Assembly (NCBI RefSeq): GCF_963853765.1
Contig: NC_088854.1
Span: 29,946,001 to 30,010,000, forward strand
Direction: 5' to 3'
Length of the DNA stretch: 64,000 nucleotides
From: Magallana gigas
Taxonomy: Eukaryota
Shown in pieces: positions 20,062 through 64,000 of the stretch. Position 1 is the stretch's first letter, and every line of letters starts with the position of its first letter. The notes under the pieces are model-generated. The model searched no databases. It was not told the DNA's origin and saw nothing but the letters and a program-made list of their open reading frames with translations. Position numbers and translations under genes: made by a program.

Positions 20062-20203
20062 NNNNNNNNNNNNNNNNNNNNNNNNNNNNNNNNNNNNNNN
20101 NNNNNNNNNNNNNNNNNNNNNNNNNNNNNNNNNNNNNNNNNNNNNNNNNNNNNNNNNNNNNNNNNNNNNNNNNNNNNNNNNNNNNNNNNNNNNNNNNNNN
20201 NNN
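20062..20203. other. Assembly gap (142 N)
   Basis: Run of N. Distance and contiguity across it are uncertain. Confidence 0.98.
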
Positions 20204-23266: not shown

Positions 23267-23272
23267 TATAAA
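23267..23272 (+). promoter_or_regulatory. Putative TATA box of the divergent fasciclin gene
   Basis: TATAAA, 47 bp upstream of ATG 23314. Confidence 0.45.
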
Positions 23273-23313
23273 TATTCATTGAAATTATTGCAATTCTTAT
23301 TGAACACTTCAAC

Positions 23314-24215: not shown

Positions 24216-24253
<38 letters not shown>

Positions 24254-24280
24254 TACAACATGACAACTTGTCATGTTGTA

Positions 24281-24318
<38 letters not shown>

Positions 24319-29639: not shown

Positions 29640-29642
<3 letters not shown>

Positions 29643-29728
<86 letters not shown>
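29643..29728. repeat. (AT)43 microsatellite
   Basis: Pure dinucleotide run. Confidence 0.95.
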
Positions 29729-29730
<2 letters not shown>

Positions 29731-31646
29731 TGTTGTTGGTTATTGATCTCAGTAACATAAATTAACAATGCAGATGCAGACATATGTTACTTTAAATTTG
29801 GACACTCAATAACACTTCAAAGTTGTGTATGTTAAAGGGGGGGGGGGTTGAATACCACAAATGCATAAAAAGAATGGCAACTCTGCAAATATTTAAACAT
29901 TCAATAGGTTAAAAAAAAACATAATACATGTATACGTGTGAAATGGACACTGAACCAAGAAACTGTGGTATTGATTCGTTTATTATGTTTGACGGGTTGT
30001 TTTTTTTTTTAGGTAATCCGCTTCGATTGATTTCATATGAGACATTTATGTAATTTCATTTTCGCATTGATTATGTTTTTTTGTACTGCTTTGTTTATTA
30101 TGCAGCAACACTTCATTTATTAAATTATTTAGTTATTTTTGTCCTAAGGAGCATTATTATGAAACACTTTCCTTCATAAGCAAAAATCATTTCACTCAGT
30201 TACATGATGAAAAATATATCTTTACGTAAACTTGTAAGAATTTCGTTCTGGGCAAATTTTTCCTAGATTCATTTCAAAAGTACAGTATTTTAGGAGCGGT
30301 TACACTTTTCAAGGTTCTTTATAATGAAGATGTATGGTTATTTAGATACCAGCAAACGTCATCACATACACATTTGATATTTTATCGAGTTTTAAAACGG
30401 TAATTTAACCAAAAAATAGTAACCAAATCTGATTTTTAAAAATGCAGCAATAAGAGATAGAGATAAAACACATGATGCAAAGTGAAGTCATGGTTAAGGT
30501 TTAGTTTTACTTTGTTTCAGTTTTCTCACACGACGCCTTCTTGATAGTTTGATTCCCCATGGAATTTTAATTTCAGTACCTGAAAACATTTCAATATAAC
30601 ATGAAAATGTTTTTCTTTTTGTTTTAAAAATCAAGGCATCAGCAAAAATGTAAATATGAATATATCAATGAAAATATACGTAGTGGCTTTGTGAAAAAAA
30701 CAAAAAACTGGCACGGAACATTGTTTATAAAATAGGAAAGGAGGGTGGCCGGGGTGGGGGATGGGGTGGGGAGACTGCCTCGAAATCATAAAAAGGCGAA
30801 AAAATCCCTTCTCTAATTTTCAAAGTATCAATCCGTGATGGTGAGGGTTGGAGGGAGTAGGGCTGCATAGTAACTGAACTTTCCATTATGAAAATGTTTG
30901 CCAGTTTTTTTACAAGCTGCAAAAGGGGGGGGGGGGGGGTAGGTAGCTTCATTTAACACCCCCCCCCTCCCCCCGATGCTAGGTCCTTTGCAAATGGTCA
31001 TTCAAAGATAACGAATTTTGACCTCTACATTCCAAGAACGTGAAGGAATCCAATCTCAACGATAAAGAAAAACGTTTAACGTGTGTCGGTAAACGTGAAA
31101 ATGTGATTACAGAAGGTACATGTACATGTATATCTAATGAAAATGTTATTTACTTATAATATAACGAATCCCTTTTTCACAATTTCTACACGATTTTTAC
31201 ATTGATGCATTTTGCAGATTTAAACGAATTTAAATAAAAAACACACCGCAATGTGATATTAGTATTTGGCATTAGTGCATGCTAGTCTCATTATCACATA
31301 TAATATCATAAGACTTTTTGATTGGTAATTTAGAGACTCTTTTCATACTTTTATTACCAAGCAGTTTAGTAAATTTGTTGATGATATTCCAACTATGTCC
31401 TTTTTAAGATCAACTTAATTTTCTGTTTACATGAAAGAGCAAAATGTTTCACAATAATGAATATTTGGTTTAGGTCGCAAGGGGATTCTTATTTGTTTAA
31501 AAAAAAATAACTCATTTAAATGCAATCTATATTAATTAAACGACCATTTTTCTAAATTACACTTATTTGGATCCTCTACTTCATATTGTGGGTAACATAT
31601 GAAACATGGTGATAAGTAATGAAACTTGTATGTGTTTCATTTTCAT

Positions 31647-31649
<3 letters not shown>

Positions 31650-31711
<62 letters not shown>
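31650..31711. repeat. (GA)31 microsatellite; shorter GA tracts at the equivalent site of the other units
   Basis: Pure GA run. Homologous short tracts at about 38250, 44140, 50044, 56000 and 61700. Confidence 0.95.
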
Positions 31712-31718
<7 letters not shown>

Positions 31719-32240
31719 CACAATTAAAAAAATTATATCCTCAGTCTATCTTTTATTGATGTCCATTAACAAGAATTAGTCAGTAAAGTAATTTTTGTTC
31801 TTTCAATAAATGACACGATTACTTTTAAAAAATCCTTCTTAAAAATAAGTTGTCTAAGAAAAAATATACTGTAGAAATATAGGGCGAGAATGATATCATG
31901 AACTGAAGCTAAGTGAATGTGTGGTCAATTCTTCTAGAGATAAATGTCCCCAACTTACGAAAGACCATGCCACCTGAAGAGGTCCTCGGGGGATTTCTGT
32001 CAAATTTGAAATTTTAAAAGCAATCGATATCAAATAAAAATATTGTCCTATATATTTAAAAATGTTTTTATTCTTAATGAGCATGCAATATCCATACAAA
32101 TGTCTGAAATTTGTTATTTGATATGAAGTGAAATCAGTTAAGGCCCTATCGGAACCCACAGGGTGTCCTTAAGAATTATGAAAACATTCATGGACACATT
32201 TCAACGACGGGTGCTAAGATGGTTACATAAATTGGAAAAC

Positions 32241-32246
32241 TATAAA
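32241..32246 (+). promoter_or_regulatory. Putative TATA box of array copy A. Equivalent sites at 38798, 44688, 50590 (TATAAC), 56565, 62265
   Basis: CTATAAATG conserved 77-78 bp upstream of each array ATG. Confidence 0.6.
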
Positions 32247-32318
32247 TGTATCGAAAATTTACTTGTCTTCACATAACCTTCCTGACAAACCTAAACCACA
32301 ACTTTATAGCCACTAACG

Positions 32319-34354
32319 ATGCTCGCCTTTGTAGCTTTGACCGTGATTGTGCAGAGTGTGTTTGGGGGAAACCTGGTAGAGGTTCTACAAAACGACGGTG
32401 AGACGACTTTGATAGCTCTTGTTAAACAAGCGGGTCTGGCCGACGCTCTACTGTCAGGTATGCTGTTTTCAATAATTTAATATATATTAGACGATTTAAT
32501 GATTGAATTGTTTTGTCTAAGCGGAATTACTAGAAAACTCAAGTAGCATTAGTGAAGAGGAGTTTTAATTTTGTTTTTAATTCAAATATGATATCAATTC
32601 GAGAAATGTTTCACCCATTTAACCTCAAAATGACTGCACCTTGCAAATTTTCATTCAAAATAAAACACTATGTAACCACTATTAAGTTTTTCCAAACCAC
32701 TGGTCATCATTACTGCCTTAAACATAATACATATTCGTGACATTTTACCTTTTACAAAATAAATGATATTACTTAATTGAAAGCAAAAAATGATAATCAT
32801 GATCTATGCGAATTTCAAAATCTCATTACATCATTTTATGACTACATGTATACCCTAAATCCCTAATAACAGTAAACGTTGACTGAAGATAGAAATGATT
32901 TATATTACAAATGATTTAAATATAGAGGGTTTTTCTACGTATTATTTCTGCAAAAAAAAAAAAAAAAAAAAAAAAAACCCGATCCGATCGACCTCCTGAA
33001 TTTGTTCTGTAAACAAAATTCACTTTTACGTATTTTTACATAAATGATCATAATACATGTAATAATGCATAAAATTCAAGCAACAAACAGATTCGAGATA
33101 GTTCACCTGGATTTAAAAGAAACTTTAAATTCTGACTATGTGCTCAATCTCTGATAACAATATCATCTGAACGAGAAGTGATTACTAATTTTAATTTTCT
33201 GTTTACTATCACAGGAGAGTACACCATATTTGCTCCAACAAACGCTGCATTCTCCAAACTTCCCCAGTCTGTCCTTGACGGTCTACAGAGAGATACCACC
33301 GCTTTGGCAAATATACTGAAATACCACGTGGTCAAAGGTTCCATTCACAAGGCCGATGCATCCAATGAGCTTCAGTTGGAGACTTTGGCTGGAACCAAAA
33401 TCAGATTCAACATCTATAATCACAATAACGTATGTGTTTTAAAGTTTTCTTTTTTATGTACTAAAATTAATCAAATATATCTTCTCATAAACAATCATTC
33501 AAACTACATAGACATTTTTTGTTTGTACGTGTAGGTTGTTACAGTGGAAGGATCCAAAATCACACACTTTGATCTGACCGCCTCAAATGGAATGGTGCAC
33601 GTCATCGACACCGTGATGATGCCTCCTACAGGAAGCATCGTGGATTTGGTGGCTGGCAACAGTGACCTGAGCACTCTTTTATCTAAGGTGCAGTCAGCTG
33701 GATTAGCCGGGGCACTACAGGGTTAGTTATTATGCTTGTGTTTTTATACATGTTTTCAAATTTTATTTTCTACCATTACTTAAAAAATGAATATTTAATA
33801 TTCCCACTATTTTATACAGGGGATGCTCTAACAGTGTTTGCACCAACCAATGCTGCTTTCAATAGACTTGGTAGTCATGTTTTGGACAACCTTAGAAGAA
33901 ACCCACAGCTTCTTAAAGGTATGCATTTCTCAATTGATATCTTATTTACTGATGATTACAACTCAAATTTAAAATGCGAGTAAGATCTCTCTTTTCTCTT
34001 TAGAAATTCTGGAGTACCACGTCGTTCCTCACACTGAATACTCAGCTGGATTGTACAACCGAGAATACCTCAGAACCCTTGATACTCACCATGACGTCAT
34101 CAGACTTGGAGTCAGCAGTAAGTGTTCAAGCTTATGTTATTGTCACCTTTATTGTTATTTTAGAAATCTGTGCATCGGTAAAAAAAATAATACAATAAAT
34201 TTTTCTCATTCCAGGTACTAATGGTGTTGTTATTAATCATCGTTCTCACGTGACACAAGCCGACATCAGCGCCACCAACGGTGTCGTACACATCATAGAT
34301 CACGTACTTATTCCATCCCGTTATCTTTTCTCTGCGATATTGGGGAAAAAGTAA
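32319..34354 (+). CDS. Two-FAS1-domain secreted protein, array copy A, 297 aa. Exons 32319-32457, 33215-33429, 33535-33721, 33820-33918, 34004-34117, 34215-34354
   Basis: Signal peptide MLAFVALTVIVQSVFG. FAS1 H1/YH/H2 motifs occur twice. Exons of 139/215/187/99/114/140 nt with intact frame, ending RYLFSAILGKK*. AATAAA at 34480. Confidence 0.93.
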
Positions 34355-37300: not shown

Positions 37301-37410
37301 ATACTTTTTCAATGCTTTCATAATAGAGTAATTTAATAAACTTATTAAAAATAGTGTACCTGTGTCCTTTAAAGATCATCTTAATTATTGTTCACATGAA
37401 AGAGTAATAA

Positions 37411-37988
37411 AGGACTATGTGCGGTTTGCTCAAATATCTGCCCCCGATTTTAACCAATTTTTAAATAGTATCGTATAAAAATAAAATCTTCACAAATCAT
37501 TGTATAGAGGATGCCTATAACTTTAATCTTGATTTTAGTCATCATTGCTCATTTGCTGTTTATCTATGACGTCACCTAAATGACCTAATTCCCGCAAATT
37601 TGCAAACAAATGAAAATATTCTCATTTTTGCTCTATATCTTGCATTCGGATGTATAGAGCGCAGGTCTGCTCAAGTGCGATATTAACATATATTTTTTGT
37701 CAGATAGATATACACATTATACTAAAAAATTGTACTTGAGCAAGCCTGCGCTCGATGTTTCCGAGTCGAAAAACCATCGGAAAACACCCATATTTTGCTA
37801 CAAAACATCAATTTATCAAAATAATGCAATCTTCATGACGTCATTTCTACATTATGACGTCACTGTGGTGATAACCTTTTACACCTTTATTTCCAATATG
37901 GTTTTAAATATCTTTCACCTAATTTTTAAAGCTCTTTTTAAAACTTTGAGTTTGGGGGCAAAAAATGCATAAAACGACACATAGTCCT
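37411..37988. mobile_element. Copy-specific 578-bp DNA transposon insertion (Kolobok-like TIR AGGACTATGTG) upstream of copy B
   Basis: 11-bp TIRs. Absent at the homologous site GAAAGAGTAATAA|TTTTTT in the other spacers (e.g. ~43873, ~49778). No clean TTAA TSD. Confidence 0.8.
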
Positions 37989-38874
37989 TTTTTTAAAAAT
38001 GTTTCACAATAATCAATGTTTGGTATAAGTTGTAAGATGATTCTTAAATGTACAAAAATATTAACGCATTTCAGTGCAATCATTATCAATTAAAGGACAA
38101 TTTTTCTAAATAACACTTATTAGTTCATCAACACCATATCAAAATTTCCATACGTTTGAATCGTTGAGAATTTTTGTGTGTAACAAATACAAATGGTCCA
38201 TGTAGTAGAAAAAGAAGCTTACCTATATATTTCATTTTCATACTTTGACTGAGAGAGAGAGAATGAGAGAAATACCATACCATTAAAAAATTATATCCTC
38301 AATCTATCTTTTATTTGATGTCCATTAACAAGAATAAGTTAATAACTTTTTTTCAATAAATGATATGATTACCTTTCAAAATAAACAAATCCTACTTAAA
38401 AATAATTGGTCTCAAAAAAATCTGCTGTATGAATTTAGGGCGAAAATGATATCATGAACTCAAGATAGGTGAATGTGTAGTCAATTCTTCTAGAGATAAA
38501 TGTCCTCAACTTACAAAAGACCATGCCACCTGAAGAGGTCCTCGGGGGATTTCTGTCAAATTTGAAATTAAAAAAAAATCGATATCAAAATAAAATAATT
38601 GACAATTACATATATAAAACATGTCTTTGTTATGAACATGCAATATTCATACTAAAATGTCTGAATTTCATTATTTGATATGAAATGAAATCAGTTAAGG
38701 CCCTATCGGAACCCACAGGGTGTCCTTAAGAATTATGAAAACATTCATGGATACATTTCAACGACGGGTGCTAAGATGGTTACATAAATTGGAATACTAT
38801 AAATGTATCGAAAATTTACTTGTCTTCACAAAACCTTCCTGACAAATCTAAACCACAACTTATAGCCACTAACG

Positions 38875-40922
38875 ATGCTCGTCTTTGTAGCTTTGACCGT
38901 GTTTGTGCAGAGTGTTTTTGGGGGAAACCTAGTAGAGGTTCTACAAAACGATGGGGAGACGACTTTGATAGCTCTTGTAAAACAAGCGGGTCTGGCCGAC
39001 GCTCTACTGTCAGGTATGCTGTTTTCAATAATTTAATATATATTAGACGATTTAATGCATGATTGAATTGTTTTGTCTCAGCGGAATTACTAGAAAACTC
39101 AAGTGGCGTTAGTCAAGGGGAGTTTTAAATTTGTTTTTAATTCAAATGTTCAAAAAAATAAATGATACAATTCGAGAAATGTTTCACCCATTTGCCTTCA
39201 AAATGACTGGACCTTGCAATTCGTCATTCAAAATAAAACACTATGTAACCACTATTAAGTTTTTCCAAACCACTGGTCATCATTACTGCCTTAAATATAA
39301 TACATATGTGTGACATTTTACCTATTACCAAATAAATGATATAACTGATTTGAAACCAAAAAAGTGAATCATGATATATGCGAATTTCAAAACCTCATTT
39401 TATGACTCCATGTATACCCTAAATCCCTAGTAACAGTAAACGTTGACTGAAGATAGAAATGATTTATATGACAAATGATTCAAATATAGAGGGTTTTTCT
39501 GCATATTATTTCGGCAAAAAAAAAAAATAAAAAAAAAAAAAAAAAAAATCCCGATCTGATCGACCTCCTGAATTTGTTCTGTAGACAAAATTCGCTTTTA
39601 CGTATTTTTACATAAATGATCATAATAATAATGCATAAAATTCAAGCAACAAACAGATTCGAGATAGTTCACCTGGATTTAAAAGAAACTTTAAATTCTG
39701 ACTATGTGCTCAATCTCTGATAACAATATCATCTGAACGAGAAGTGATTACTAATTTTAATTTTCTGTTTACTATCACAGGAGAGTACACTATATTTGCT
39801 CCAACAAACGCTGCATTCTCCAAACTTCCCCAGTCTGTCCTTGACGGTCTACAGAGAGATACCACCGCTTTGGCAAATATACTGAAATACCACGTGGTCA
39901 AAGGTTCCATTCACAAGGCCGATGCATCCAATGAGCTTCAGTTAGAGACTTTGGCTGGAACCAAAATCAGATTTAACATCTATAATCACAATAACGTAAG
40001 TGTTTTAAAGTTTTCTTTTTTGTGATACTAAAATTAATCAACTCTATCTTCTCATAAACAATCAATCAAACTACATAGACTTTTTTGTTTGTACATGTAG
40101 GTTGTTACAGTGGAAGGATCCAAAATCACACACTTCGACCTGACCGCCTCAAATGGAATGGTGCACGTCATCGACGCCGTGATGATGCCTCCTACAGGAA
40201 GCATTGTGGATTTGGTGGCTGGCAACAGTGACCTGAGCACTCTTTTATCTAAGGTCCAATCAGCTGGATTAGCCGGGGCACTACAGGGTTAGTAATTATG
40301 CTTGTGTTTTTATAGATGTTTTCCAAATTTTATTTTCTAACATTACTTAAAAAATGAATATTTAATATTATCACTATTTTATGCAGGAGATGCTCTAACA
40401 GTGTTTGCACCAACCAATGCTGCGTTCAATAGACTTGGCAGTCATGTTTTGGACAATCTTAGAAGAAACCCACAGCTTCTTAAAGGTATGTATTTCTCAA
40501 TTGATATCTTATTCACTTATGATAACAAGTTTAATTAAAAATGCAGGTAAGATCTCTCTTTTTCTCATTAGAAATTCTGGAGTACCACGTCGTTCCTCAC
40601 ACTGAATACTCAGCTGGATTGTACAACCGAGAATACCTCAGAACCCTTGATACTCACCATGACGTCATCAGACTTGGAGTCAGCAGTAAGTATTCAAGCT
40701 TATCTTATTGTCACCTTTATTGTTATTTTAGATATCTGTGCATCGTTAAATAAAATAATACAATAAATTTTCCTCATTCCAGGTACTAATGGTGTTGTTA
40801 TTAATCGCCGTTCTCACGTGACACAAGCCGACATCAGCGCCACCAACGGTGTCGTACACATCATTGATCACGTACTTATTCCATCCCGTTATCTTTTCTC
40901 TGCGATATTGGGGAAAAAGTAA
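38875..40922 (+). CDS. Two-FAS1-domain secreted protein, array copy B, 297 aa. Exons 38875-39013, 39781-39995, 40101-40287, 40387-40485, 40572-40685, 40783-40922
   Basis: Same exon sizes and phases, intact frame. Variants MLVF, DAVMM, INRRS. Confidence 0.92.
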
Positions 40923-43151
40923 TCATCTGAACAAACCATTTTGACATTTTTGAAGCCATGTCTCCATTGAATCACACATTTTAATTGTATATACTTGTTA
41001 TTGAATATGCTTGTTATTTTTATTGAGTGAAAACGTATTAATTTTGCAATAAACATTGACAAAAAGTGAAAATATTTTTCTGGTTGTTCACTACTGGTGA
41101 CTTGATTTACACTGAGCAAAACGATTTCATGAAAATTTTAACTTGAATACCTATATATGGTTATAATGATTTTTAAGAATAACAACACAAAATCACTTCA
41201 ACGCAAATTGTATAATCTGTAATTGTTTTGTTAAATATTTCATCAAAATGAGTTTGATTCTTTAATGTTTGAAAAAGAAACCATCAAGAATATTATTTTA
41301 CCAATAATTATACTAAAAATTTGAATTCCTTTGAAATGAATTTGTTTTCAAATTAACACGAATTCTATAGCGAAAACAAAACTGAAAAATGTTTGTTTTT
41401 TTTTAAATTAAGATATGAGAAAGGATGCATTTAAAACAAATATTTTTTTAGAGTCTAATAACAAATGACATTTGATCATTATTTCTATTGACACACTCAG
41501 ATAACTAACACAAGCTATAGTTATTTTATTCCACAAAATAACTATAACACAAGGTATAGTTATTTTATTCCACATCAATTTTATCTGAAAACGTTATGAT
41601 AAATTCTTTTACACATTTCTTTTTGGCTTTTTTGGCCAGTATTGGCCAAGAAATATCTAAATCAAATGTTAAAACTTTTTTTTAATTCGGCAAGCACGGG
41701 GGTTGGAACAATTGTCTAAGCCTCAAATGTAAGTGATTATTAAGAAGTAGATACATCTTACTTTATCATTAGTTTAGCTCCAGTCTATCTACACTCCCTA
41801 AAATATTTTGCAATGCTGTAGTTTCAGGATTGTATAGTTTTTTTAATGATTCGAAGGAGACACTTTTTTCTATTGTATCAATCTTAACTTGAACATGTAG
41901 TTTTTAGAAAAAAAAGCCAAATAACTAAATTGGCGACGATTCATATGTATAACGGAAAATGTCAAATCAATAGTTTTAGGAAAATAAACACAGAGGTCAA
42001 AATCTGCTTTAATTGTGAAATGTGGTCAATGAAGTTGAAGAAAATTTTAAAGATAACAGTTCTTGAAGTTATGACATGACATGGTTATTTTTGCTAAATT
42101 ATCCGTGAAATAAAAGACAAAACAACGTTTACAACATAGTAATTTAGATATGTCACAATAGCGCAACAGTAAAACAAATGATCTTCAGAAGTAAATCAAT
42201 CGATTTTTAATGCTATTACATGTACTAGGATAAATTCCTTCCTTGCTGCTTTCAAAGGGGGGGGGGGGGGGTGTTCCATAAATGTTTCTTCTTCTAAGAT
42301 TTTCATGTAGGTATAGTAAATGCAATATTGTTGATAAGTAAATGTTTGATAGGAGTAAAACATATTCTGATTCATTCACGATTAAATTCTAATATGTCTT
42401 TCCTTCATTCAAGGATGAAAAAAAGTTACAAAAGTTTTACATGTATAATCGTTACTGGTAGTGCATCATTCAAACAAATCCAAGCCAAATCTACCAAAGG
42501 ATTTCTCATGAAGAAGGTTGTAGTTAAAATTTATTGTATTTACAGGCATTACATTTTCAAAGTGTTGCAAAGTAAAATCAAAGAATACAAATAAAAGCAA
42601 ACAGAAAATAAATGGTTGTGAACACTGACTCCACATTAACTTCAAAAATTCAATTATTTTATCCTAAAAGAGTGAAAGGTCTGAATAGCTCATCAGCAAA
42701 ATACTTCTTGTCATGCACACCGCCTATTTCGCAATGCATCAGCGACTTTTTCCATTTCTTCCTATTTAAGACATTAGGATCTCAAGTTTTTAAAAGATAT
42801 AATTTTTTTTCACAATTAATGATTGTTTAATGGTTAAAAATAAAAAAAAAACCACCAAAAACGTCGGAAACGGTCGGTCTATTCGTTACCCAAGCTGACT
42901 CGCACAAAAACTCGTATCATTGAAAGCTTAATGGAATGAACTCCACACGTCCAATGGGTTTGGCACCCGTTCATTCGTCCGATCACCTGATAACTCGCGC
43001 AATCCTATCACATAATCTAACAACAATCGCTTTCAGTGTACAAGAGTTGTACATAGACGCAAGATATACAACAATATTTAATACATTTGCATCTTACAAC
43101 AGTCGCTCTAAATCGAACGAACATAGCCGAATACTTTTTCATATGTGATTA

Positions 43152-43363
43152 CTGTATACAGGAACTTTTTTCATCGATTTACTTCCATCCTTTTCGCCCT
43201 CGTTGTCAACCCAGAAATTTAGGTCTGGGCGAATTCCAATGTCTTAAACGTATCTCTCTTTGAATACAGCCTTGTTTCGAAATATTCAGAACAGAGCAAA
43301 ACCGTTTAATTTGCAAGTCAAGACGAGGACAAATAACACAGGGCGAAAATAAGCCCCATTACG
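43152..43363. mobile_element. Degenerate TA-flanked MITE present in every array spacer (also ~36700-36910, ~49050-49263, ~54995-55205, ~60705-60915)
   Basis: TA-CTGTATACAGG start, repeated TTCGCC/GGCGAA motifs and a ...TTACAG-TA end in some copies. Resembles Tc1/mariner-type oyster MITEs, from recall. Inserted before the array expanded. Confidence 0.4.
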
Positions 43364-44764
43364 TATGTTGGCAGCATTTAACGATTGAATACGTTGTTAC
43401 TTTTGCTCATGAGCCAATTCCTAAAGAGTTCTTCATTCACCCCCCCCTCCCCGAAATGCTAGGTAACTGAGAGATAAGGAATTTTGACATCTTCATTCCA
43501 AGAACGTGAAGGAATCCCATCTTAGCGATAAATATAGCAAAACGTAAAACGTTTAACATGTGTCGATAAACGTGAAAATGTGATTACAGATGCCACACGT
43601 ATATGTATCTCTAATATAAGTATTAGTTACTTGTAATATCATGGATCCTGAACAGTTTGTTTTTCACAAGAAACACACCGCAGTATAATATTAGTATTTG
43701 GCATTAGTGCATGCTAGACATGTTATCACATTTAATATCATAATGACGTTTTGATTTGTTATCTTGATACTTTTTCAATGCTTTCATAATAGAGTAATTT
43801 AATAAACTTGTTAAAATAGTGTACCTGTGTCCTTTAAAGATCATCTTGATTATTGTTCACATGAAAGAGTAATAATTTTTTTTAGAAAATGTTTCACAAT
43901 AATCAATGTTTGGTATAAGTTGCAAGATGATTCTTAAATGTACAAAATATTAACGCATTTCAGTGCAATCATTATCAATTAAAGGACAATTTTTCTAAAT
44001 AACACTTATTGGTTCATCTACACCATATCAAAATTTCCATATGTTTGAATCGTTGAGAATTTTTGTGTGTAACAAATACAAATGATCCATGTAGTAGAAA
44101 AAGAAGCTTACCTCTATATTTCATTTTCATACTTTGACTGAGAGAGATAGAATGAGAGAAATACCATACCATTAAAAAATTATATCCTCAATCTATCTTT
44201 TATTGATGTCCATTAACAAGAATTAGTTAATATTTTTTTTTTCAATAAATGATATGATTACCTTTCAAAATAGACAATCCCTACTTAAAAATAATTGGTC
44301 TAAAAAAAAATCTGCTGTATGAATTTAGGGCGAAAATGATATCATGAACTCAAGATAGGCGAATGTGTAGTCAATTCTTCTAGAGATAAATGTCCTCAAC
44401 TTACGAAAGACCATGCCACCTGAAGAGGTCCTCGGGGGATTTCTGTCAAATTTGAAATAAAAAAAAACTCGATATCAAAATAAAATAATTGACAATTACA
44501 TATATAAAACATGTCTTTGTTATGAACATGCAATATTCATACTTAAATGTCTGAATTTTGTTATTTTATATGAAATGAAATCAGTTAAGGCCCTATCGGA
44601 ACCCACAGGGTGTCCTTAAGAATTATGAAAACATTCATGGACACATTTCAACGACGGGTGCTAAGATGGTTACATAAATTGAAATACTATAAATGTATCG
44701 AAAATTTTATTGTCTTCACATAACCTTCCTGACAAACCTAAACCACAACTTATAGCCACTAACG

Positions 44765-46815
44765 ATGCTCGCCTTTGTAGCTTTGACCGTGTTTGTGCAG
44801 AGTGTTTTTGGGGGAAACCTAGTAGAGGTTCTACAAAACGATGGGGAGACGACTTTGATAGCTCTTGTTAAACAAGCGGGTCTGGCCGACGCTCTTCTGT
44901 CAGGTATGCTGTTTTCAATAATTTAATATATATTAGACGATTTAATGCATGATTGAATTGTTTTGTCTCAGCGGAATTACTAGAAAACTCAAGTGGCGTT
45001 AGTCAAGGGGAGTTTTAAATTTGTTTTTAATTCAAATATTCAAAATAATAAATGATACAATTCGAGAAATATTTCAACCATTTTCCTTCAAAATGACTGG
45101 ACCTTGCAATTCGTCATTCAAAATAAAACACTATGTAACCACTATTAAGTTTTTCCAAACCACTGGTCATCATTACTGCCTTAAACATAATACATATTCG
45201 TGACATTTTACCTATTACCAAATAAATGATATAACTGATTTGAAACCAAAAAAGTGAATCATGATATATGCTAATATCAAAACCTCATCACATCATTTTA
45301 TGACTCCATGTATACCCTAAATCCCTAGTAACAGTAAACATTGACTGAAGATAGCAATGATTTATATTACAAATGATTCAAATATAGAGGGTTTTTCTGC
45401 ATATTATTTCTGCAAAAAAAAAAATAAAAAAAAAAAAAAAAAATCCCGATCTGATCGACCTCCTGAATTTGTTCTGTAGACAAAATTCACTTTTACGTAT
45501 TTTTACATAAATGAGCATAATAATAATGCATAAAATTCAAGCAACAAACAGATTCGAGATAGTTCACCTGGATTTAAAAGAAACTTTAAATTCTGACTAT
45601 GTGCTCAATCTCTGATAACAATATCATCTGAACGAGAAGTGATTACTAATTTTAATTTTCTGTTTACTATCACAGGAGAGTACACTATATTTGCTCCAAC
45701 AAACGCTGCATTCTCCAAACTTCCCCAGTCTGTCCTTGACGGTCTACAGAGAGATACCACCGCTTTGGCAAATATACTGAAATACCACGTGGTCAAAGGC
45801 TCCATTCACAAGGCCGATGCATCCAATGAGCTTCAGTTGGAGACTTTGGCTGGAACCAAAATCAGATTCAACATCTATAATCACAATCACGTATGTGTTT
45901 TAAAGTTTTCTTTTTTGTGTACTAAAATTAATCAAATCTATCTTCTCATAAACAATCAATCAAACTACATAGACATTTTTTGTTTGTACGTGTAGGTTGT
46001 TACAGTGGAAGGATCCAAAATCACACACTTTGATCTGACCGCCTCAAATGGAATGGTGCACGTCATCGACACCGTGATGATGCCTCCTACAGGAAGCATC
46101 GTGGATTTGGTGGCTGGCAACAGTGACCTGAGCACTCTTTTATCTAAGGTGCAGTCAGCTGGATTAGCCGGGGCACTACAGGGTTAGTTATTATGCTTGT
46201 GTTTTTATACATGTTTTCAAATTTTATTTTCTACCATTACTTAAAAAATGAATATTTAATATTCCCACTATTTTATACAGGGGATGCTCTAACAGTGTTT
46301 GCACCAACCAATGCTGCTTTCAATAGACTTGGTAGTCATGTTTTGGACAACCTTAGAAGAAACCCACAGCTTCTTAAAGGTATGCATTTCTCAATTGATA
46401 TCTTATTTACTGATGATTACAACTCAAATTTAAAATGCGAGTAAGATCTCTCTTTTCTCTTTAGAAATTCTGGAGTACCACGTCGTTCCTCACACTGAAT
46501 ACTCAGCTGGATTGTACAACCGAGAATACCTCAGAACCCTTGATACTCACCATGACGTCATCAGACTTGGAGTCAGCAGTAAGTATTCAAGCTTATCTTA
46601 TTGTCACCTTTATTGTTATTTTAGATATCTGTGCATCGTTAAATAAAATAATACAATAAATTTTCCTCATTCCAGGTACTAATGGTGTTGTTATTAATCG
46701 CCGTTCTCACGTGACACAAGCCGACATCAGCGCCACCAACGGTGTCGTACACATCATTGATCACGTACTTATTCCATCCCGTTATCTTTTCTCTGCGATA
46801 TTGGGGAAAAAGTAA
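44765..46815 (+). CDS. Two-FAS1-domain secreted protein, array copy C, 297 aa (A/B mosaic). Exons 44765-44903, 45676-45890, 45996-46182, 46281-46379, 46465-46578, 46676-46815
   Basis: Intact frame with the same exon sizes. Confidence 0.92.
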
Positions 46816-50666: not shown

Positions 50667-52705
50667 ATGCTCGCCTTTGTAGCTTTGACCGTGCTTGTGC
50701 AGAGTGTGTTTGGAGGAAACCTGGTAGAGGTTCTACAAAACGATGGGGAGACGACTTTGATAGCTCTTGTAAAACAAGCGGGTCTGGCCGACGCTCTACT
50801 GTCAGGTATGCTGTTTTCAATAATTAATTATATATTAGACGATTTAATGATTGAATTGTTTTGTCTAAGCGGAATTACTAGAAAACTCAAGTGGTGTAAG
50901 TCAAGAGGAGTTTTAATTTTGTTTTTAATTCAAATATTCAAAATAATAAATGATATCAATTCGAGACATGTTTCACCCATTTGCTCTCAAAATGACTGGA
51001 CCTTGCAAATCGTCATTCAAAATAAAACAATATGTAACCACTATTAAGTTTTTCCAAACCACTGCCTTAAAAATAATACATATTCGTGACATTTAACCTA
51101 TTACCAAATAAATGATATAACTCAATTGAAACCAAAAAGTGAATCAAAATCTATGCAAATTTCAAAATCTCATTACATCATTTTATGTCTACATGTAGAC
51201 CCTAAACTAAATCTCTAATAACAGTAAACGCTGACTGAAGATAGAAATGATTTATATTACAAATGATTAAAGTATAGAGGGTTTTTCTAGGTATAATTTC
51301 TCCAAAACAAATAACCAAAAAAAAAAAAAAAATAAGAAAAAAAAGAAAAGACAATCCGATCGGCCTCCTGAATTTGATCTGCAAACAAAATTCATTTTTA
51401 AATTTTTAAATAAATGATCACGATTATATGCATGAAATTCAAGCAACAAACAGATTATTTCACCTGGATTTAAAAGAAACTTTAAGTCCGGATTTAACAA
51501 TGCAATCAATCTCTACTAATGATTACTAATTTTAATTTTCTGTTTACTATCACAGGAGAGTACACCATATTTGCTCCAACAAACGCTGCTTTCTCCAAAC
51601 TTCCCCAGTCCGTGCTTGATGGTCTACAGAGAGATACCACCGCTTTGGCAAATATACTGAAGTACCACGTGGTCAAAGGCTCCATTCACAAGGCCGATGC
51701 ATCCAATGAACTTCAGTTGGAGACTTTGGCTGGAACGAAAATCAGATTTAACATCTATTATCACAATCACGTAAGTGTTTTAAAGTTTTCGTTTTTTGTG
51801 ATACCCAAATCCGTCAAACCTATCTTCTCGCATACAATTGCTCAAACTACAAAGACATTTTTGCTTGTACATGCAGGTTGTTACAGTGGAAGGATCCAAA
51901 ATCACACATTTCGACCTAACCGCCTCTAATGGAATGGTGCACGTGATTGACACTGTGATGATGCCTCCTTCAGGAAGCATTGTGGATTTGGTGGCCGGCA
52001 ACAGCGACTTGAGCACTCTTTTATCTAAGGTCCAGTCAGCTGGATTGGCCGGGGCACTACAAGGTTCATTATTCTGCTTGTTTTATTATTATTTTTTTTC
52101 CAATTTTATTTTTTTGGCATTGTTTAAAAAATGAATATTTAATATTCCCACTATTTTATACAGGAGATGCTTTAACAGTGTTTGCACCAACCAATGCTGC
52201 TTTCAATAGACTTGGTAGTCATGTTTTGGACAACCTTAGAAGAAACCCACAGCTTCTTAAAGGTATGCATTTCTCAATTGATATCTTCTTTATTGATGAT
52301 TACAACTCAAATTTAAAATGCAGGCAAGATCTCTCTTTTTCTCATTAGAAATTCTGGAGTACCACGTCGTTCCTCACACTGAATACTCAGCTGGATTGTA
52401 CAACCGAGAATACCTCAGAACCCTTGATACTCACCATGACGTCATCAGACTTGGAGTCAGCAGTAAGTATTCAAGCTTACGTTATTGTATCAATCACCTT
52501 TATTGTTATTTTAGATATCTGTGCATCGTTAAATTAAATAATACAATAAATTTTCCTTATTCCAGGTAACAATGGTGTTGTTATTAATCATCGTTCTCAT
52601 GTGACACAAGCCGACATCAGCGCCACCAACGGTGTTGTACACATCATAGATCACGTACTTATTCCATCCCGTTATCTTTTCTCTGCGATATTGGGGAAAA
52701 AATAA
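50667..52705 (+). CDS. Two-FAS1-domain secreted protein, array copy D, 297 aa. Exons 50667-50805, 51556-51770, 51877-52063, 52164-52262, 52349-52462, 52566-52705
   Basis: Intact frame. Variants IYYHNH, PPSG, SNNG. Intron-3 donor GTTCAT. Confidence 0.9.
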
Positions 52706-55700: not shown

Positions 55701-56004
55701 CTGTTCACATGAAAGATTAATAATTGTTTTAGAAAATGTTTCACAATAATCAATGTTTGGGATAACTTGCAAGATGATTCTTAAATGTTTATTGTTCAAA
55801 AATATTTACGCATTCAGTGCAATCATTATCAATTAAACAACAATTTTTCTAAATCACACTTATTGGTTCATCTACACCATATTATAATTTCCATACGTTT
55901 GAATCATTGATTATTTTAGTGCGTAACAAATACAAATGATCCATGAAGTAGAACAAGAAACTTATTTATATATTTCATTTTCATACATTGACTGAAAGAG
56001 AGAG

Positions 56005-56041
<37 letters not shown>

Positions 56042-56641
56042 CCATACTATTAAAAAATCATATCCTAAGTCTATCTTTTATTGATGTCCATTAACAAGAA
56101 TTAGTTAATGATTTTTTTTCAATTAATGACATGATAACCTTTCAAAATAGACAAATCCTACTTAAAAATAAATGGTCTCAGAAAAAATCTGCTGTATGAA
56201 TTTAGGGCGAAAATGATATCATGAACTCAAGATAGGTGAATGTGTAGTCAATTCTTCTAGAGATAAATGTCCCCAACTTACGAAAGACCATGCCACCTAA
56301 AGAGGTCCTCGGGGGGATTTCTGTCAAATTTGAAATTTAAAAAAACTCGATATTAAATGCATTAATTGACAATTACATAAATAAAACTTGTGTTTGTTAT
56401 AAACATGCAATATTCATACTTAAATGTCTGAATTTTGTTATTTTATATGAAATGAAATCATCTAAGGCTCTATCGGAACCCACAGGGTGTCTTTAAGTAT
56501 TATGAAAACTTCCATGGACACATTTCAACGACGGGTGCTAAAATGGTTACATAAATTGGAATGCTATAAATGTATCGAAAATTTACTTGTCTTCACATAA
56601 CCTTCCTGACAAACCTAAACCACAACTTATAGCCACTAACG

Positions 56642-58412
56642 ATGCTCGCCTTTGTAGCTTTGACCGTGTTTGTGCAGAGTGTGTTTGGAGGAAACCTGGT
56701 AGAGGTTCTACAAAACGATGGGGAGACGACTTTGATAGCTCTTGTTAAACAAGCGGGTCTGGCCGACGCTCTACTGTCAGGTATGCTGATTTCAATAATA
56801 AATTATATATTAGACGATTAAATTATTGAATTGTTTTGTCTAAGCGGAATTACTAGAAAACTCAAGTGGTGTAGGTCAAGAGGAGTTTTAATTTTGTTTT
56901 TAATTCAAATATTCAAAATAATAAATGATATCAATTCGAGACATGTTTCACCCATTTGCTCTCAAAATGACTGGACCTTGCAAATTGTCATTCAAAAATA
57001 AAATAAAACAATATGTAAACACTATTTAAGTTTTTCCAAACCACTGCCTTAAAAACAATACATATTCGTGACATTTAACCTATTACCAAATAAATGATAT
57101 AACTCAAATGAAACCAAAAAAGTGAATCATAATCTATGCAAATTTCAAAATCTCATTACATCATTTTATGACTACATGTAGACCCTAAACTAAGTCCGGA
57201 TTTAACAATGCATTCAATCTCTACTAATGATTACTAATTTTAATTTTCTGTTTACTATCACAGGAGAGTACACCATATTTGCTCCAACAAACGCTGCTTT
57301 CTCCAAACTTCCCCAGTCCGTGCTTGATGGTCTACAGAGAGATACCACCGCTTTGGCAAATATACTGAAATACCACGTGGTCAAAGGCTCCATTCACAAG
57401 GCCGATGCATCCAATGAACTTCAGTTGGAGACTTTGGCTGGAACCAAAATCAGATTTAACATCTATAATCACAATCACGTAAGTGTTTTAAAGTTTTCTT
57501 TTTTGTGATACCCAAATCCGTCAAACCTATCTTCTCGCATACAATCGCTCAAACTACAAAGACATTTTTGCTTGTACATGCAGGTTGTTACAGTGGAAGG
57601 ATCCAAAATCACACATTTCGACCTAACCGCCTCTAATGGAATGGTGCACGTGATTGACACTGTGATGATGCCTCCTTCAGGAAGCATTGTGGATTTGGTG
57701 GCCGGCAACAGCGACTTGAGCACTCTTTTATCTAAGGTCCAGTCAGCTGGATTGGCCGGGGCACTACAAGGTTCATTATTCTGCTTGTTTTATTATTATT
57801 TTTTTTCCAATTTTATTTTTTTAGCATTGTTTAAAAAATGAATATTTAATATTCCCACTATTTTATACAGGAGATGCTTTAACAGTGTTTGCACCAACCA
57901 ATGCTGCTTTCAATAGACTTGGTAGTCATGTTTTGGACAACCTTAGAAGAAACCCACAGCTTCTTAAAGGTATGCATTTCTCAATTGATATCTTCTTTAT
58001 TGATGATTACAACTCAAATTTAAAATGCAGGCAAGATCTCTCTTTTTCTCATTAGAAATTCTGGAGTACCACGTCGTTCCTCACACTGAATACTCAGCTG
58101 GATTGTACAACCGAGAATACCTCAGAACCCTTGATACTCACCATGACGTCATCAGACTTGGAGTCAGCAGTAAGTATTCAAGCTTACGTTATTGTATCAA
58201 TCACCTTTATTGTTATTTTAGATATCTGTGCATCGTTAAATTAAATAATACAATAAATTTTCCATATTCCAGGTACTAATGGTGTTGTTATTAATCATCG
58301 TTCTCATGTGACACAAGCCGACATCAGCGCCACCAACGGTGTTGTACACATCATAGATCACGTACTTATTCCATCCCGTTATCTTTTCTCTGCGATATTG
58401 GGGAAAAAATAA
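56642..58412 (+). CDS. Two-FAS1-domain secreted protein, array copy E, 297 aa. Exons 56642-56780, 57264-57478, 57584-57770, 57871-57969, 58056-58169, 58273-58412
   Basis: Intact frame. Intron 1 shortened to 483 bp. Confidence 0.92.
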
Positions 58413-61400: not shown

Positions 61401-62341
61401 CTGTTCACATGAAAGATTAATAATTGTTTTAGAAAATGTTTCACAATAATCAATGTTTGGGATAACTTGCAAGATGATTCTTAAATGTTTATTGTTCAAA
61501 AATATTTACGCATTCAGTGCAATCATTATCAATTAAACAACAATTTTTCTAAATCACACTTATTGGTTCATCTACACCATATTATAATTTCCATACGTTT
61601 GAATCATTGATTATTTTAGTGCGTAACAAATACAAATGATCCATGAAGTAGAACAAGAAACTTATTTATATATTTCATTTTCATACATTGACTGAAAGAG
61701 AGAGAAAATGAGAGAGAGAGAGAGAGAGAGAAAGAAAAATACCATACTATTAAAAAATCATATCCTAAGTCTATCTTTTATTGATGTCCATTAACAAGAA
61801 TTAGTTAATGATTTTTTTTCAATTAATGACATGATAACCTTTCAAAATAGACAAATCCTACTTAAAAATAAATGGTCTCAGAAAAAATCTGCTGTATGAA
61901 TTTAGGGCGAAAATGATATCATGAACTCAAGATAGGTGAATGTGTAGTCAATTCTTCTAGAGATAAATGTCCCCAACTTACGAAAGACCATGCCACCTAA
62001 AGAGGTCCTCGGGGGGATTTCTGTCAAATTTGAAATTTAAAAAAACTCGATATTAAATGCTTTAATTGACAATTACATAAATAAAACTTGTGTTTGTTAT
62101 AAACATGCAATATTCATACTTAAATGTCTGAATTTTGTTATTTTATATGAAATGAAATCATCTAAGGCTCTATCGGAACCCACAGGGTGTCTTTAAGTAT
62201 TATGAAAACTTCCATGGACACATTTCAACGACGGGTGCTAAAATGGTTACATAAATTGGAATGCTATAAATGTATCGAAAATTTACTTGTCTTCACATAA
62301 CCTTCCTGACAAACCTAAACCACAACTTATAGCCACTAACG

Positions 62342-64000
62342 ATGCTCTCCTTTGTAGCTTTGACCGTGTTTGTGCAGAGTGTGTTTGGAGGAAACCTGGT
62401 AGAGGTTCTACAAAACGATGGGGAGACGACTTTGATAGCTCTTGTTAAACAAGCGGGTCTGGCCGACGCTCTACTGTCAGGTATGCTGATTTCAATAATA
62501 AATTATATATTAGACGATTAAATTATTGAATTGTTTTGTCTAAGCGGAATTACTAGAAAACTCAAGTGGTGTAGGTCAAGAGGAGTTTTAATTTTGTTTT
62601 TAATTCAAATATTCAAAATAATAAATGATATCAATTCGAGACATGTTTCACCCATTTGCTCTCAAAATGACTGGACCTTGCAAATGGTTATTCAAAAATA
62701 AAATAAAACAATATGTAAACACTATTTAAGTTTTTCCAAACCACTGCCTTAAAAACAATACATTTTCGTGACATTTAACCTATTACCAAATAAATGATAT
62801 AACTCAATTGAAACCAAAAAAGTGAATCATAATCTATGCAAATTTCAAAATCTCATTACATCATTTTATGACTACATGTAGACCCTAAACTAAGTCCGGA
62901 TTTAACAATGCATTCAATCTCTACTAATGATTACTAATTTTAATTTTCTGTTTACTATCACAGGAGAGTACACCATATTTGCTCCAACAAACGCTGCTTT
63001 CTCCAAACTTCCCCAGTCCGTGCTTGATGGTCTACAGAGAGATACCACCGCTTTGGCAAATATACTGAAATACCACGTGGTCAAAGGCTCCATTCACAAG
63101 GCCGATGCATCCAATGAACTTCAGTTGGAGACTTTGGCTGGAACCAAAATCAGATTTAACATCTATAATCACAATCACGTAAGTGTTTTAAAGTTTTCTT
63201 TTTTGTGATACCCAAATTCGTCAAACCTATCTTCTCGCATACAATCGCTCAAACTACAAAGACATTTTTGCTTGTACATGCAGGTTGTTACAGTGGAAGG
63301 ATCCAAAATCACACATTTCGACCTAACCGCCTCTAATGGAATGGTGCACGTGATTGACACTGTGATGATGCCTCCTTCAGGAAGCATTGTGGATTTGGTG
63401 GCCGGCAACAGCGACTTGAGCACTCTTTTATCTAAGGTCCAGTCAGCTGGATTGGCCGGGGCACTACAAGGTTCATTATTCTGCTTGTTTTATTATTATT
63501 TTTTTTCCAATTTTATTTTTTTAGCATTGTTTAAAAAATGAATATTTAATATTCCCACTATTTTATACAGGAGATGCTTTAACAGTGTTTGCACCAACCA
63601 ATGCTGCTTTCAATAGACTTGGTAGTCATGTTTTGGACAACCTTAGAAGAAACCCACAGCTTCTTAAAGGTATGCATTTCTCAATTGATATCTTCTTTAT
63701 TGATGATTACAACTCAAATTTAAAATGCAGGCAAGATCTCTCTTTTTCTCATTAGAAATTCTGGAGTACCACGTCGTTCCTCACACTGAATACTCAGCTG
63801 GATTGTACAACCGAGAATACCTCAGAACCCTTGATACTCACCATGACGTCATCAGACTTGGAGTCAGCAGTAAGTATTCAAGCTTACGTTATTGTATCAA
63901 TCACCTTTATTGTTATTTTAGATATCTGTGCATCGTTAAATCAAATAATACAATAAATTTTCCTTATTCCAGGTACTAATGGTGTTGTTATTAATCATCG
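62342..64000 (+). CDS. Two-FAS1-domain secreted protein, array copy F, 3'-truncated by the window. Exons 62342-62480, 62964-63178, 63284-63470, 63571-63669, 63756-63869, 63973->64000
   Basis: Exactly 5700 bp downstream of copy E with the same junctions. Signal peptide variant MLSF. Confidence 0.9.

What the first reader, a model, noticed from the sequence alone, without database searches (positions are those of the whole stretch)
30957..64000. At least six intact, near-identical fasciclin genes in a tandem array: apparent dosage amplification
Seen: all complete copies keep open frames, splice sites and 297 aa. Amino-acid differences are few (signal peptide, NHNN/NHNH/YHNH, T/A, PPT/PPS, H/R, T/N), while synonymous, intron and spacer differences are more frequent. 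Exon 5 looks identical in all six. Inference: purifying selection on a protein needed in bulk, such as an adhesive, mucus, shell-matrix or microbe-interaction protein, with probable copy-number variation between individuals.
Basis: partly seen in the sequence, partly recalled or inferred. Interest (0 to 1): 0.7.

Follow-up and report, generated by a model that had tools for sequence, protein, structure and literature searches.

The report
Oyster tandem array of FAS1 genes
The Pacific oyster carries a real head-to-tail array of at least eight intact, almost identical genes for a small secreted two-FAS1-domain adhesion-type protein, kept alike by strong purifying selection and gene conversion; this is ordinary for oyster genomes, and whether the copies exist to raise dosage is still untested.

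Summary
The window is Magallana (Crassostrea) gigas chromosome C2.

- **Genes.** Five complete six-exon genes of 297 aa and most of a sixth lie at 32319-64000 on the + strand, with all splice sites GT/AG. The sixth gene is completed intact 112 nt past the window end.
- **Full extent.** Two more near-identical copies follow, then two diverged intact paralogs and one pseudogene. A diverged paralog also sits upstream in the window.
- **Protein.** It has a signal peptide plus two FAS1 domains, no Cys and no RGD. RefSeq names it "TGFBI ig-h3-like", but it lacks the defining features of TGFBI.
- **Selection.** Between copy subgroups dS is 0.15-0.22 and dN 0.003-0.012, giving dN/dS of 0.02-0.07.
- **Gene conversion.** Exon 5 is identical in seven copies. 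Different exons are homogenised in different gene pairs, while between-species dS in those same exons is 0.7-0.8. That pattern fits patchy gene conversion, not synonymous constraint.
- **Other species.** C. virginica and C. angulata have syntenic arrays. Copies cluster by species for gigas versus virginica. The angulata array is about 25 kb longer.
- **Expression.** This is the weak point. Spliced cDNA exists, but three sampled RNA libraries show little or none. "Needed in bulk" is therefore unproven, and read-depth copy-number variation could not be tested.
- **Earlier scan notes.** The scan has reported similar concerted arrays of other genes elsewhere in this genome.

The parts
23111..26350 (+). 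Diverged upstream paralog c0: six exons, 295 aa, two FAS1 domains. It is about 45% identical in protein to the array copies.
   Evidence: Weak exon hits. C. gigas cDNA contigs L031 and L033 align as six exons at 97-100%. Its protein is the first half of the fused RefSeq model P0286. Contigs from 10 RNA runs carry it.
27025..28816 (-). Claudin/PMP22-like gene between c0 and the array. It serves as a synteny marker.
   Evidence: ORFs at 28505-28816, 27482-27718 and 27025-27270 on the - strand. A PMP22_Claudin gene is called at the same relative place in C. virginica and C. angulata.
30960..32318 (+). Left edge of the repeat unit: upstream spacer and promoter region of copy 1.
   Evidence: blastn homology of 70-87% to the spacers in front of copies 2-8 begins at 30960-31006.
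32319..34354 (+). Copy 1 (subgroup A), 297 aa, intact.
38875..40922 (+). Copy 2 (subgroup A), 297 aa, intact. Exons: 38875-39013, 39781-39995, 40101-40287, 40387-40485, 40572-40685, 40783-40922.
   Evidence: Pfam Fasciclin x2, E = 4.6e-57.
44765..46815 (+). Copy 3 (subgroup A), 297 aa, intact.
50667..52705 (+). Copy 4 (subgroup B), 297 aa, intact. Its protein equals RefSeq XP_065932130.1.
56642..58412 (+). Copy 5 (subgroup B), 297 aa, intact. Its protein equals RefSeq XP_034302106.2.
62342..64000 (+). Copy 6 (subgroup B), cut by the window end inside exon 6. It is intact in the genome (ends 112 nt beyond the window).
40572..40685 (+). Exon 5 (example from copy 2). This 114-nt exon is identical in copies 1-7 and marks a recombination or conversion boundary.
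   Evidence: dS = 0 between subgroups A and B. Copy 7 matches copies 5 and 6 up to about this exon and diverges after it.
40923..44764 (.). Intergenic spacer of about 3.8 kb (example between copies 2 and 3). It holds a high-copy repeat core at 43215-43248 and no Rfam family.

Best explanation
This is a genuine tandem gene family in the Pacific oyster. It was made by repeated duplication of a ~6-kb unit, most simply by unequal crossing-over, and it evolves in concert. Each unit encodes a ~30-kDa secreted protein: a signal peptide, two FAS1 domains, no cysteine, no RGD and no membrane anchor. By homology this is an extracellular adhesion or matrix protein. Selection keeps the protein almost invariant, while patchy gene conversion and recombination between units homogenise stretches as short as one exon. 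Copies 1-7 share promoter-proximal sequence and encode near-identical mature proteins, so they most likely act as redundant copies of one gene, with copy number raising or buffering output (dosage). What is shown: the array, its intactness, purifying selection, conversion, and lineage-specific turnover. What is inferred: the adhesion/matrix function and the dosage benefit.
For: Array structure and intact models. FAS1 identity: Pfam PF02469 twice, E = 4.6e-57; human TGFBI 5nv6 by sequence, E = 2e-66; AlphaFold model with pLDDT 85 superposes on a TGFBIp/periostin FAS1 pair at TM 0.84 and 1.9-2.0 A over 275 residues. Selection: dN/dS 0.02-0.07 at dS 0.15-0.22; 62 synonymous against 16 non-synonymous segregating changes; gigas versus virginica dS 1.18 against dN 0.082. 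Conversion, from uneven dS across exons: exon 5 is 0 between A and B (P = 0.006); exon 2 is 0.02 between c9 and c11 when other exons are 0.12-0.97 (P = 5e-8); exon 3 is 0.03 between cv1,2 and cv6,7 (P = 1e-5). The same exons reach 0.7-0.8 between species. Conversion, from other evidence: introns of c9 and c11 are at shuffled-control identity (51%) while their exons stay alike; units 1/2/3 form alternating mosaic blocks, including 28 consecutive sites where u1 = u3. Lineage pattern: all gigas copies and all virginica copies form separate clades with 100/100 support, and the syntenic order c0-claudin-array holds in three species. Shared upstream 500 nt is 87-100% identical among copies 1-7. Transcription: intron-less Logan cDNA contigs encode the full protein, and strand-consistent exon-only reads occur in run X22.
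Against: Expression was low or absent in the three raw RNA libraries sampled, which does not fit a bulk product in those samples; their tissue or stage is unknown. No copy-specific expression and no read-depth copy number could be obtained. Units 5 and 6 differ by only 0.67% plus a 315-nt indel. That is within oyster allelic divergence, so one of them could in principle be a misplaced haplotype. Function rests on family homology only.
Confidence: 0.55

Rival explanations
1. Neutral turnover. The array exists because this duplication-prone locus keeps gaining and losing units by unequal crossing-over. Each expressed copy is under ordinary purifying selection, but copy number itself is not selected.
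For: Copy number and composition differ between C. gigas and C. angulata. One member is already a pseudogene (c10), and C. virginica has an inverted frameshifted copy. The youngest pairs have higher dN/dS of 0.1-0.3. Other concerted tandem arrays of unrelated genes were noted in this genome. Expression was low in the sampled libraries.
Against: Eight of eight young copies are intact even though silent divergence reaches 0.22. Multi-copy status recurs in C. virginica, Saccostrea, Ostrea, scallops and mussels, which suggests repeated retention.
Confidence: 0.3
2. Regulatory subfunctionalisation. The copies are kept because different copies are used in different tissues, stages or conditions.
For: Subgroups differ in intron 1 length (750-770 nt against 483 nt). 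Upstream 500 nt of c8 is 79-80% identical to copies 1-7, and that of c9 and c11 is 62-67% identical, which is about alignment noise. cDNA contigs were recovered separately for c0, c11 and the copy 1-8 type.
Against: Copies 1-7 share 87-100% identical upstream sequence, and copies 5-7 are near-identical through exon 5. No expression data resolve individual copies.
Confidence: 0.1
3. Assembly artefact. Some units are haplotigs or false duplications, so the true array is much shorter.
For: Units 5 and 6 are 99.33% identical. Oyster heterozygosity is high (general knowledge).
Against: There are no gaps in the array. Units differ in spacer content and length, and each has distinct neighbours. Independent assemblies of C. 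angulata and C. virginica show comparable arrays. Another C. gigas assembly yields at least 5 distinct proteins of this type. In a DNA run, summed contig word depth at exon 2 is roughly ten times that of unique spacer contigs; this is only a rough guide.
Confidence: 0.03
4. The array is read through and spliced into multi-FAS1 (four or more domain) TGFBI-like proteins, as the fused RefSeq models of 582-895 aa suggest.
For: Fused models exist in three species. Exons 1, 3, 4 and 5 all end in phase 1, so inter-unit splicing could stay in frame. An AG lies 9 nt upstream of each ATG and is used by the fused model.
Against: The fused model P0286 keeps an internal signal peptide and joins c0 to copy 1 through translated 5'UTR, which looks like a prediction artefact. 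The cDNA contigs recovered encode single 295-298 aa proteins. No inter-unit joints were seen in the RNA reads, though depth was very low.
Confidence: 0.02

Closest known systems
Vertebrate TGFBI (beta ig-h3) and periostin
   Same: FAS1 domains with about 30% identity. The modelled two-domain packing superposes on a consecutive FAS1 pair of TGFBIp/periostin (TM 0.84). Both are secreted extracellular proteins. A YH dyad is present in both domains (sequence).
   Different: The oyster protein has two FAS1 domains, not four. It has no N-terminal cysteine-rich EMI/CROPT domain (zero Cys) and no C-terminal RGD. The RefSeq name 'TGFBI ig-h3-like' is therefore a similarity label, not orthology.
Small two-FAS1 secreted proteins of marine invertebrates: cnidarian Sym32 and the sea-urchin ~32-37 kDa 'TGFBI' gonad / hyaline-layer proteins
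   Same: Same architecture and size: signal peptide plus 2 x FAS1, about 30 kDa. Sym32 is reported as duplicated in a symbiotic anemone (PMC3141003, title and listing). A ~37-kDa TGFBI-annotated protein becomes a major band in ripening sea-urchin gonads (PMC6669438).
   Different: No sequence comparison with those proteins was made here. Their localisations (symbiosome, gonad/egg) are not shown for the oyster protein. The resemblance in architecture partly rests on my own knowledge.
Concertedly evolving tandem gene arrays
   Same: Head-to-tail units, species-specific clustering of copies, mosaic conversion tracts, and copy-number change between close relatives.
   Different: Homogenisation is incomplete and patchy (units are 65-99% identical). 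Copies form age layers, and conversion between older paralogs is confined to single exons.
Drosophila fasciclin I
   Same: FAS1 domain family.
   Different: Fasciclin I has four FAS1 domains and a GPI anchor. The oyster protein has only a ~10-residue tail after FAS1-2. Its domain packing differs from the Fas I FAS1 3-4 pair (TM 0.44, rmsd 15 A).

Membership tests
FAS1 / fasciclin domain family (Pfam PF02469) | Significant match to the FAS1 profile | tested here: met
   Two stretches, E = 4.6e-57, 192 bits against a cut-off of 22. All homologs carry PF02469.
FAS1 / fasciclin domain family (Pfam PF02469) | FAS1 fold (alpha/beta wedge) in each domain | tested here: met
   Model pLDDT 85.3. Foldseek matches TGFBIp and periostin at E = 1e-26 and TM 0.84. 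Single FAS1 domains match at TMt 0.85-0.93.
TGFBI / periostin orthologs | N-terminal cysteine-rich EMI/CROPT domain | tested here: not met
   The mature protein starts directly with FAS1-1, and there are zero cysteines.
TGFBI / periostin orthologs | Four tandem FAS1 domains | tested here: not met
   Only two FAS1 domains in 297 aa. The longer RefSeq models are fusions of neighbouring genes.
TGFBI / periostin orthologs | C-terminal RGD integrin motif (TGFBI) | tested here: not met
   No RGD in the sequence.
GPI-anchored fasciclin I type | C-terminal hydrophobic GPI-attachment signal | tested here: inconclusive
   Only about 10 residues follow FAS1-2, and the tail ends in charged residues. This looks too short for a GPI signal, but no GPI predictor was run.
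Tandem array under concerted evolution | Paralogs cluster by species rather than by position | tested here: met
   Gigas and virginica clades each have 100/100 support on CDS and 98/93 and 96/93 on protein. Against the very close C. angulata, subtypes c8 and c9 are still orthologous.
Tandem array under concerted evolution | Conversion or recombination tracts between copies | tested here: met
   Mosaic blocks among units 1-3, and a breakpoint in unit 7. There is significant heterogeneity of dS among exons, with a different exon homogenised in different pairs.
Dosage amplification | High total expression with all or most copies transcribed | tested here: inconclusive
   Spliced cDNA exists. However, reads are few in one of three sampled raw RNA libraries and essentially absent in the other two. 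No copy-resolved data are available.
Dosage amplification | Copy-number variation within the species | not testable with these tools
   Only Logan contigs of DNA runs were available, with no raw DNA reads. Indirect support comes from C. angulata and from protein sets of another C. gigas assembly.

The most novel reading that the evidence does not exclude
The two-FAS1 gene is amplified again and again in separate bivalve lineages: tight arrays in Crassostrea/Magallana, and multiple copies in Saccostrea, Ostrea, scallops and mussels. The novel reading is that selection favours mass production of one invariant extracellular coat or adhesion protein of eggs, embryos or larvae, analogous to the two-FAS1 gonad / hyaline-layer proteins of sea urchins. 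Copy number would then be an adaptive, variable trait in oysters, and exon-scale gene conversion would be the mechanism that keeps the product uniform.
Probability: 0.15. Interest if true: 0.55.

Novelty: new member of a known kind. Interest (0 to 1): 0.3.

Why it matters
The locus is a clean, gap-free example of birth-and-death combined with exon-scale gene conversion in an animal genome. The protein has stayed about 93-95% identical between oysters whose silent sites are saturated. If copy number proves to affect output of a secreted adhesion or matrix protein, the locus could be a marker for oyster traits such as larval development, settlement or haemocyte function. It would also be a handy system for measuring conversion-tract lengths. 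As it stands, the genes are already in RefSeq under a misleading TGFBI name, tandem arrays are common in this genome, and the function is inferred only from the domain family.

Tried and rejected
- **Rfam:** a scan of 25.5-64 kb found no RNA family.
- **Literature by accession:** searches for K1PF77, K1R2H7, K1R7Y0, K1PUI7, K1QGQ2 and XP_011415586 gave only an abalone paper that uses K1PUI7 as a BLAST label.
- **Literature by name:** searches for ig-h3, BGH3, TGFBI and fasciclin with oyster or Crassostrea gave scattered differential-expression mentions. These were female triploid gonad, a hyalinocyte marker 'Bgh3-20', and C. virginica larvae under acidification. None can be tied to these particular genes.
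- **Apparent spacer transcripts:** polyA-like reads in the spacer from the single-cell run sit on genomic A and T runs at 41396-41405 and 42840-42851. I rejected them as internal priming.
- **Synonymous-site constraint:** I rejected this as the reason exons 2 and 5 are identical, because the same exons reach dS 0.7-2 between species.
- **Ostrea and Saccostrea:** I first thought both were single-copy, with one gene within +-10 kb. Cluster listing and further loci then showed several dispersed or inverted copies, so I dropped that idea.
- **Read depth:** no raw DNA runs were offered, so read-depth copy number could not be tested.
Full report
**1. Where we are**

The window is G000:C2:29946001-30010000 of a 564-Mb, 29-contig assembly. 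The contig length of 61,469,542 nt equals that of the NCBI record carrying Magallana (Crassostrea) gigas proteins XP_065932130.1 and XP_034302106.2. Those two proteins are identical to copies 4 and 5 found here. The organism is therefore the Pacific oyster.

**2. The observation**

Direct repeats with a 5.7-6.6 kb period fill 31-64 kb. I read copy 2 by eye and projected its exons onto the other units.

- Each gene has six exons on the + strand, of 139/215/187/99/114/140 nt, and encodes 297 aa.
- Every intron is GT/AG.
- Five genes are complete in the window. The sixth is cut by the window end 28 nt into exon 6.
- After fetching the next 58 kb of the chromosome, copy 6 is complete and intact.

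The family continues beyond the window:

| Member | Position (ext coordinates) | State |
|---|---|---|
| copy 7 | 67727-69497 | intact |
| copy 8 | 73775-75543 | 296 aa, one codon lost |
| c9 | 82932-84565 | diverged, intact |
| c11 | 117013-118460 | diverged, intact, 296 aa |
| c10 | about 89078-92967 | decayed; in-frame stop and lost splice sites |

Upstream in the window lies a much more diverged paralog, c0, at 23111-26350. It is separated from the array by a claudin-like gene on the opposite strand at 27025-28816.

A genome-wide search places this subfamily only at C2:29.97-30.064 Mb. Other FAS1 loci are no more than 48% identical.

Exon 5 with its flanks is identical in copies 1-7. There are no gaps inside the array.

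**3. The protein**

- Pfam finds two FAS1 domains (E = 4.6e-57).
- The closest solved relatives are human TGFBIp (E = 2e-66) and periostin.
- An AlphaFold model built on 40 homologs has pLDDT 85 and pTM 0.78. It superposes on a consecutive FAS1 pair of TGFBIp/periostin at TM 0.84 and 1.9-2.0 A over 275 residues. It does not superpose on the fasciclin I domain pair.
- The mature chain is about 280 aa, 30.3 kDa, pI 6.4. It has no Cys, no RGD, no N-glycosylation sequon, and only a ~10-residue tail after FAS1-2.

It is therefore a small secreted two-FAS1 protein and not an ortholog of four-domain, EMI-bearing TGFBI, despite its RefSeq name. Several RefSeq models of 514-895 aa are fusions of neighbouring genes. 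XP_065927608 joins c0 to copy 1 through 9 nt of translated 5'UTR and keeps an internal signal peptide. I regard these as prediction artefacts, since the cDNA contigs recovered encode single 295-298 aa proteins.

**4. Selection**

Nei-Gojobori estimates define three subgroups: A (copies 1-3), B (copies 4-7) and copy 8.

- Between subgroups, dS = 0.15-0.22, dN = 0.003-0.012 and dN/dS = 0.02-0.07.
- For copy 3 versus copy 5 there are 33 synonymous and 2 non-synonymous differences (Fisher P = 2e-19).
- Among copies 1-8 there are 62 synonymous and 16 non-synonymous segregating changes. Four of the non-synonymous changes are in the cleaved signal peptide.
- The youngest pairs have higher ratios (0.1-0.3), based on very few changes.
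- Against C. virginica, dS is 1.18 (saturated) and dN is 0.082.

The protein is under strong and long-standing constraint.

**5. Duplication history and gene conversion**

Whole units are 99.3% identical for 5 versus 6, 98.5% for 4 versus 5, 94.5-97% within subgroup A, about 90% between A and B (excluding unit 7, whose spacer differs), and about 65% for unit 8 against the rest. The low figure for unit 8 reflects its different spacer.

Within copies 1-8, intron divergence roughly tracks dS: introns 2-5 are 79-87% identical between subgroups. These copies are therefore whole-unit duplicates of different ages.

Three observations show exchange between copies.

1. Units 1, 2 and 3 are mosaics of alternating blocks. 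One block has 28 consecutive informative sites where unit 1 equals unit 3, flanked by long stretches where unit 2 equals unit 3. Unit 7 equals units 5 and 6 up to about exon 5 and then diverges through exon 6 and the spacer.
2. dS is very uneven among exons, and a different exon is homogenised in different pairs:
   - exon 5 is 0.0 between A and B, where other exons are 0.11-0.39 (P = 0.006);
   - exon 2 is 0.02 between c9 and c11, where other exons are 0.12-0.97 (P = 5e-8);
   - exon 3 is 0.03 between C. virginica copies 1,2 and 6,7 (P = 1e-5).
3. Introns of c9 and c11 compared with copies 1-8 are at the shuffled-control level (51%), while their exons have dS of only 0.33.

Exons 2 and 5 reach dS 0.7-0.8 against C. 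virginica, and exon 5 falls to 0.51 against Saccostrea. Against Ostrea both exceed 1.4, and exon 2 against Saccostrea is 2.9. Synonymous-site constraint therefore cannot explain the within-species identity. Patchy gene conversion, limited to the conserved exons in the older paralogs, does explain it.

**6. Comparative picture**

- **C. virginica.** The same order is present: a c0-like gene, claudin on the opposite strand, then six intact 297-aa genes plus one inverted, frameshifted copy within 40 kb.
- **C. angulata.** It has c0, claudin, at least four copies, an unfetched 32.6 kb, two c8-like and two c9-like copies, a lone exon 2, and a c10-like pseudogene. Its c0-to-c10 span is 89.8 kb against 65.2 kb here.
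- **Trees.** All gigas copies and all virginica copies form separate clades with 100/100 support, and the protein tree agrees. Against the very close C. angulata, the c8 and c9 subtypes are still orthologous. The c9 duplication is angulata-specific. Subgroup B has no partner among the angulata copies that were fetched.
- **Other bivalves.** Ostrea edulis and Saccostrea have several copies that are dispersed or inverted rather than a tight array. Scallops and mussels also have multiple close paralogs.

The locus is thus an old, continually turning-over family, and copy number differs even between sister taxa.

**7. Expression**

Intron-less Logan contigs of 1.0-1.4 kb encode full-length proteins of the copy 1-8 type, of c11 and of c0. 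Related species yield contigs with the same exon junctions.

I laid raw reads on 38600-44599.

- One polyA library gave about 0.2-1.5x, strand-consistent, on exons 2-6 only.
- A second polyA library and a single-cell library gave essentially nothing in about 12.9 million reads each.
- The tissue and stage of these libraries are not known to me.
- In a DNA run, summed contig word depth at exon 2 (432) is roughly ten times that of unique spacer contigs (30-50). This is compatible with about ten exon-2 copies, but the tool warns that this figure is not a copy number.

Some RNA runs, including seawater metatranscriptomes, hold 11-19% of the sampled words. I could not lay them.

The literature offers only unlinked mentions of "TGFBI ig-h3" genes in oysters: up in female triploid gonads (PMC4222980), a hyalinocyte marker (bioRxiv 10.64898/2026.05.15.723513), and up in C. 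virginica larvae under acidification (PMC9498863). A ~37-kDa TGFBI-annotated protein is a major band in ripening sea-urchin gonads (PMC6669438). That is an analogy and not evidence for the oyster.

**8. Verdict**

The inferences of purifying selection and probable copy-number change are supported. "Dosage amplification for a bulk product" remains a reasonable but untested reading, and the little RNA evidence available does not favour high expression in the samples seen.

The genes are already annotated. Similar concerted arrays of other genes were noted elsewhere in this genome by this scan. I file this as a new member of a known kind, of modest interest. Its most instructive feature is the exon-scale gene conversion combined with an almost frozen protein.

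Noticed in passing
window 23111-26350 (+): Diverged two-FAS1 paralog c0 (295 aa, UniProt K1PF77-like). It is the family member most often recovered as full-length cDNA, with contigs from 10 RNA runs. It sits upstream of the array in all three Crassostrea/Magallana genomes examined.
   Followed up: partly
window 27025-28816 (-): Claudin/PMP22-like gene between c0 and the array. Its position and orientation are conserved in C. virginica and C. angulata.
   Followed up: partly
G000:C2 about 30035078-30038967 (ext 89078-92967): c10 is a decaying family member. It has an in-frame stop, altered acceptor sites, a 2.7-kb first intron and a degenerate last exon. C. angulata has a matching c10-like relic.
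   Followed up: partly
window 43215-43248 (and the same place in other spacers): A ~33-nt core of a very high-copy repeat. It has huge depth in DNA contigs (about 2500) and attracts most RNA reads laid on the unit, all of which continue into unlike sequence. It is probably a transposable-element or SINE core. No Rfam match.
   Followed up: no
RefSeq models on this locus (P0286, 593 aa; also models of 582, 514, 581, 611 and 895 aa in gigas and angulata): Gene predictors repeatedly fuse neighbouring array members into four- to six-FAS1 proteins. The gigas 593-aa model joins c0 to copy 1 via an AG 9 nt upstream of the copy 1 ATG. That AG is conserved and might instead mark a 5'UTR intron.
   Followed up: partly
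runs X15-X17, X20: Seawater and marine metatranscriptomes hold 11-19% of the sampled words of copy 2. This hints that the transcript may be abundant in planktonic oyster stages or in hatchery water.
   Followed up: no
window 20062-20203: The only assembly gap (142 N) in the window, outside the array. I left it untouched.
   Followed up: no
window 29640-29760 and 31650-31711: (TA)n and (GA)n microsatellites in the region between the claudin-like gene and copy 1. The (GA)n also occurs in the long spacer before c9.
   Followed up: no
L018/L020/L021 (C. virginica CM130313.1 48.18-48.23 Mb): One C. virginica array member is inverted relative to the others and carries a frameshift in exon 3. This shows that inversions and pseudogenisation accompany array turnover.
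   Followed up: partly
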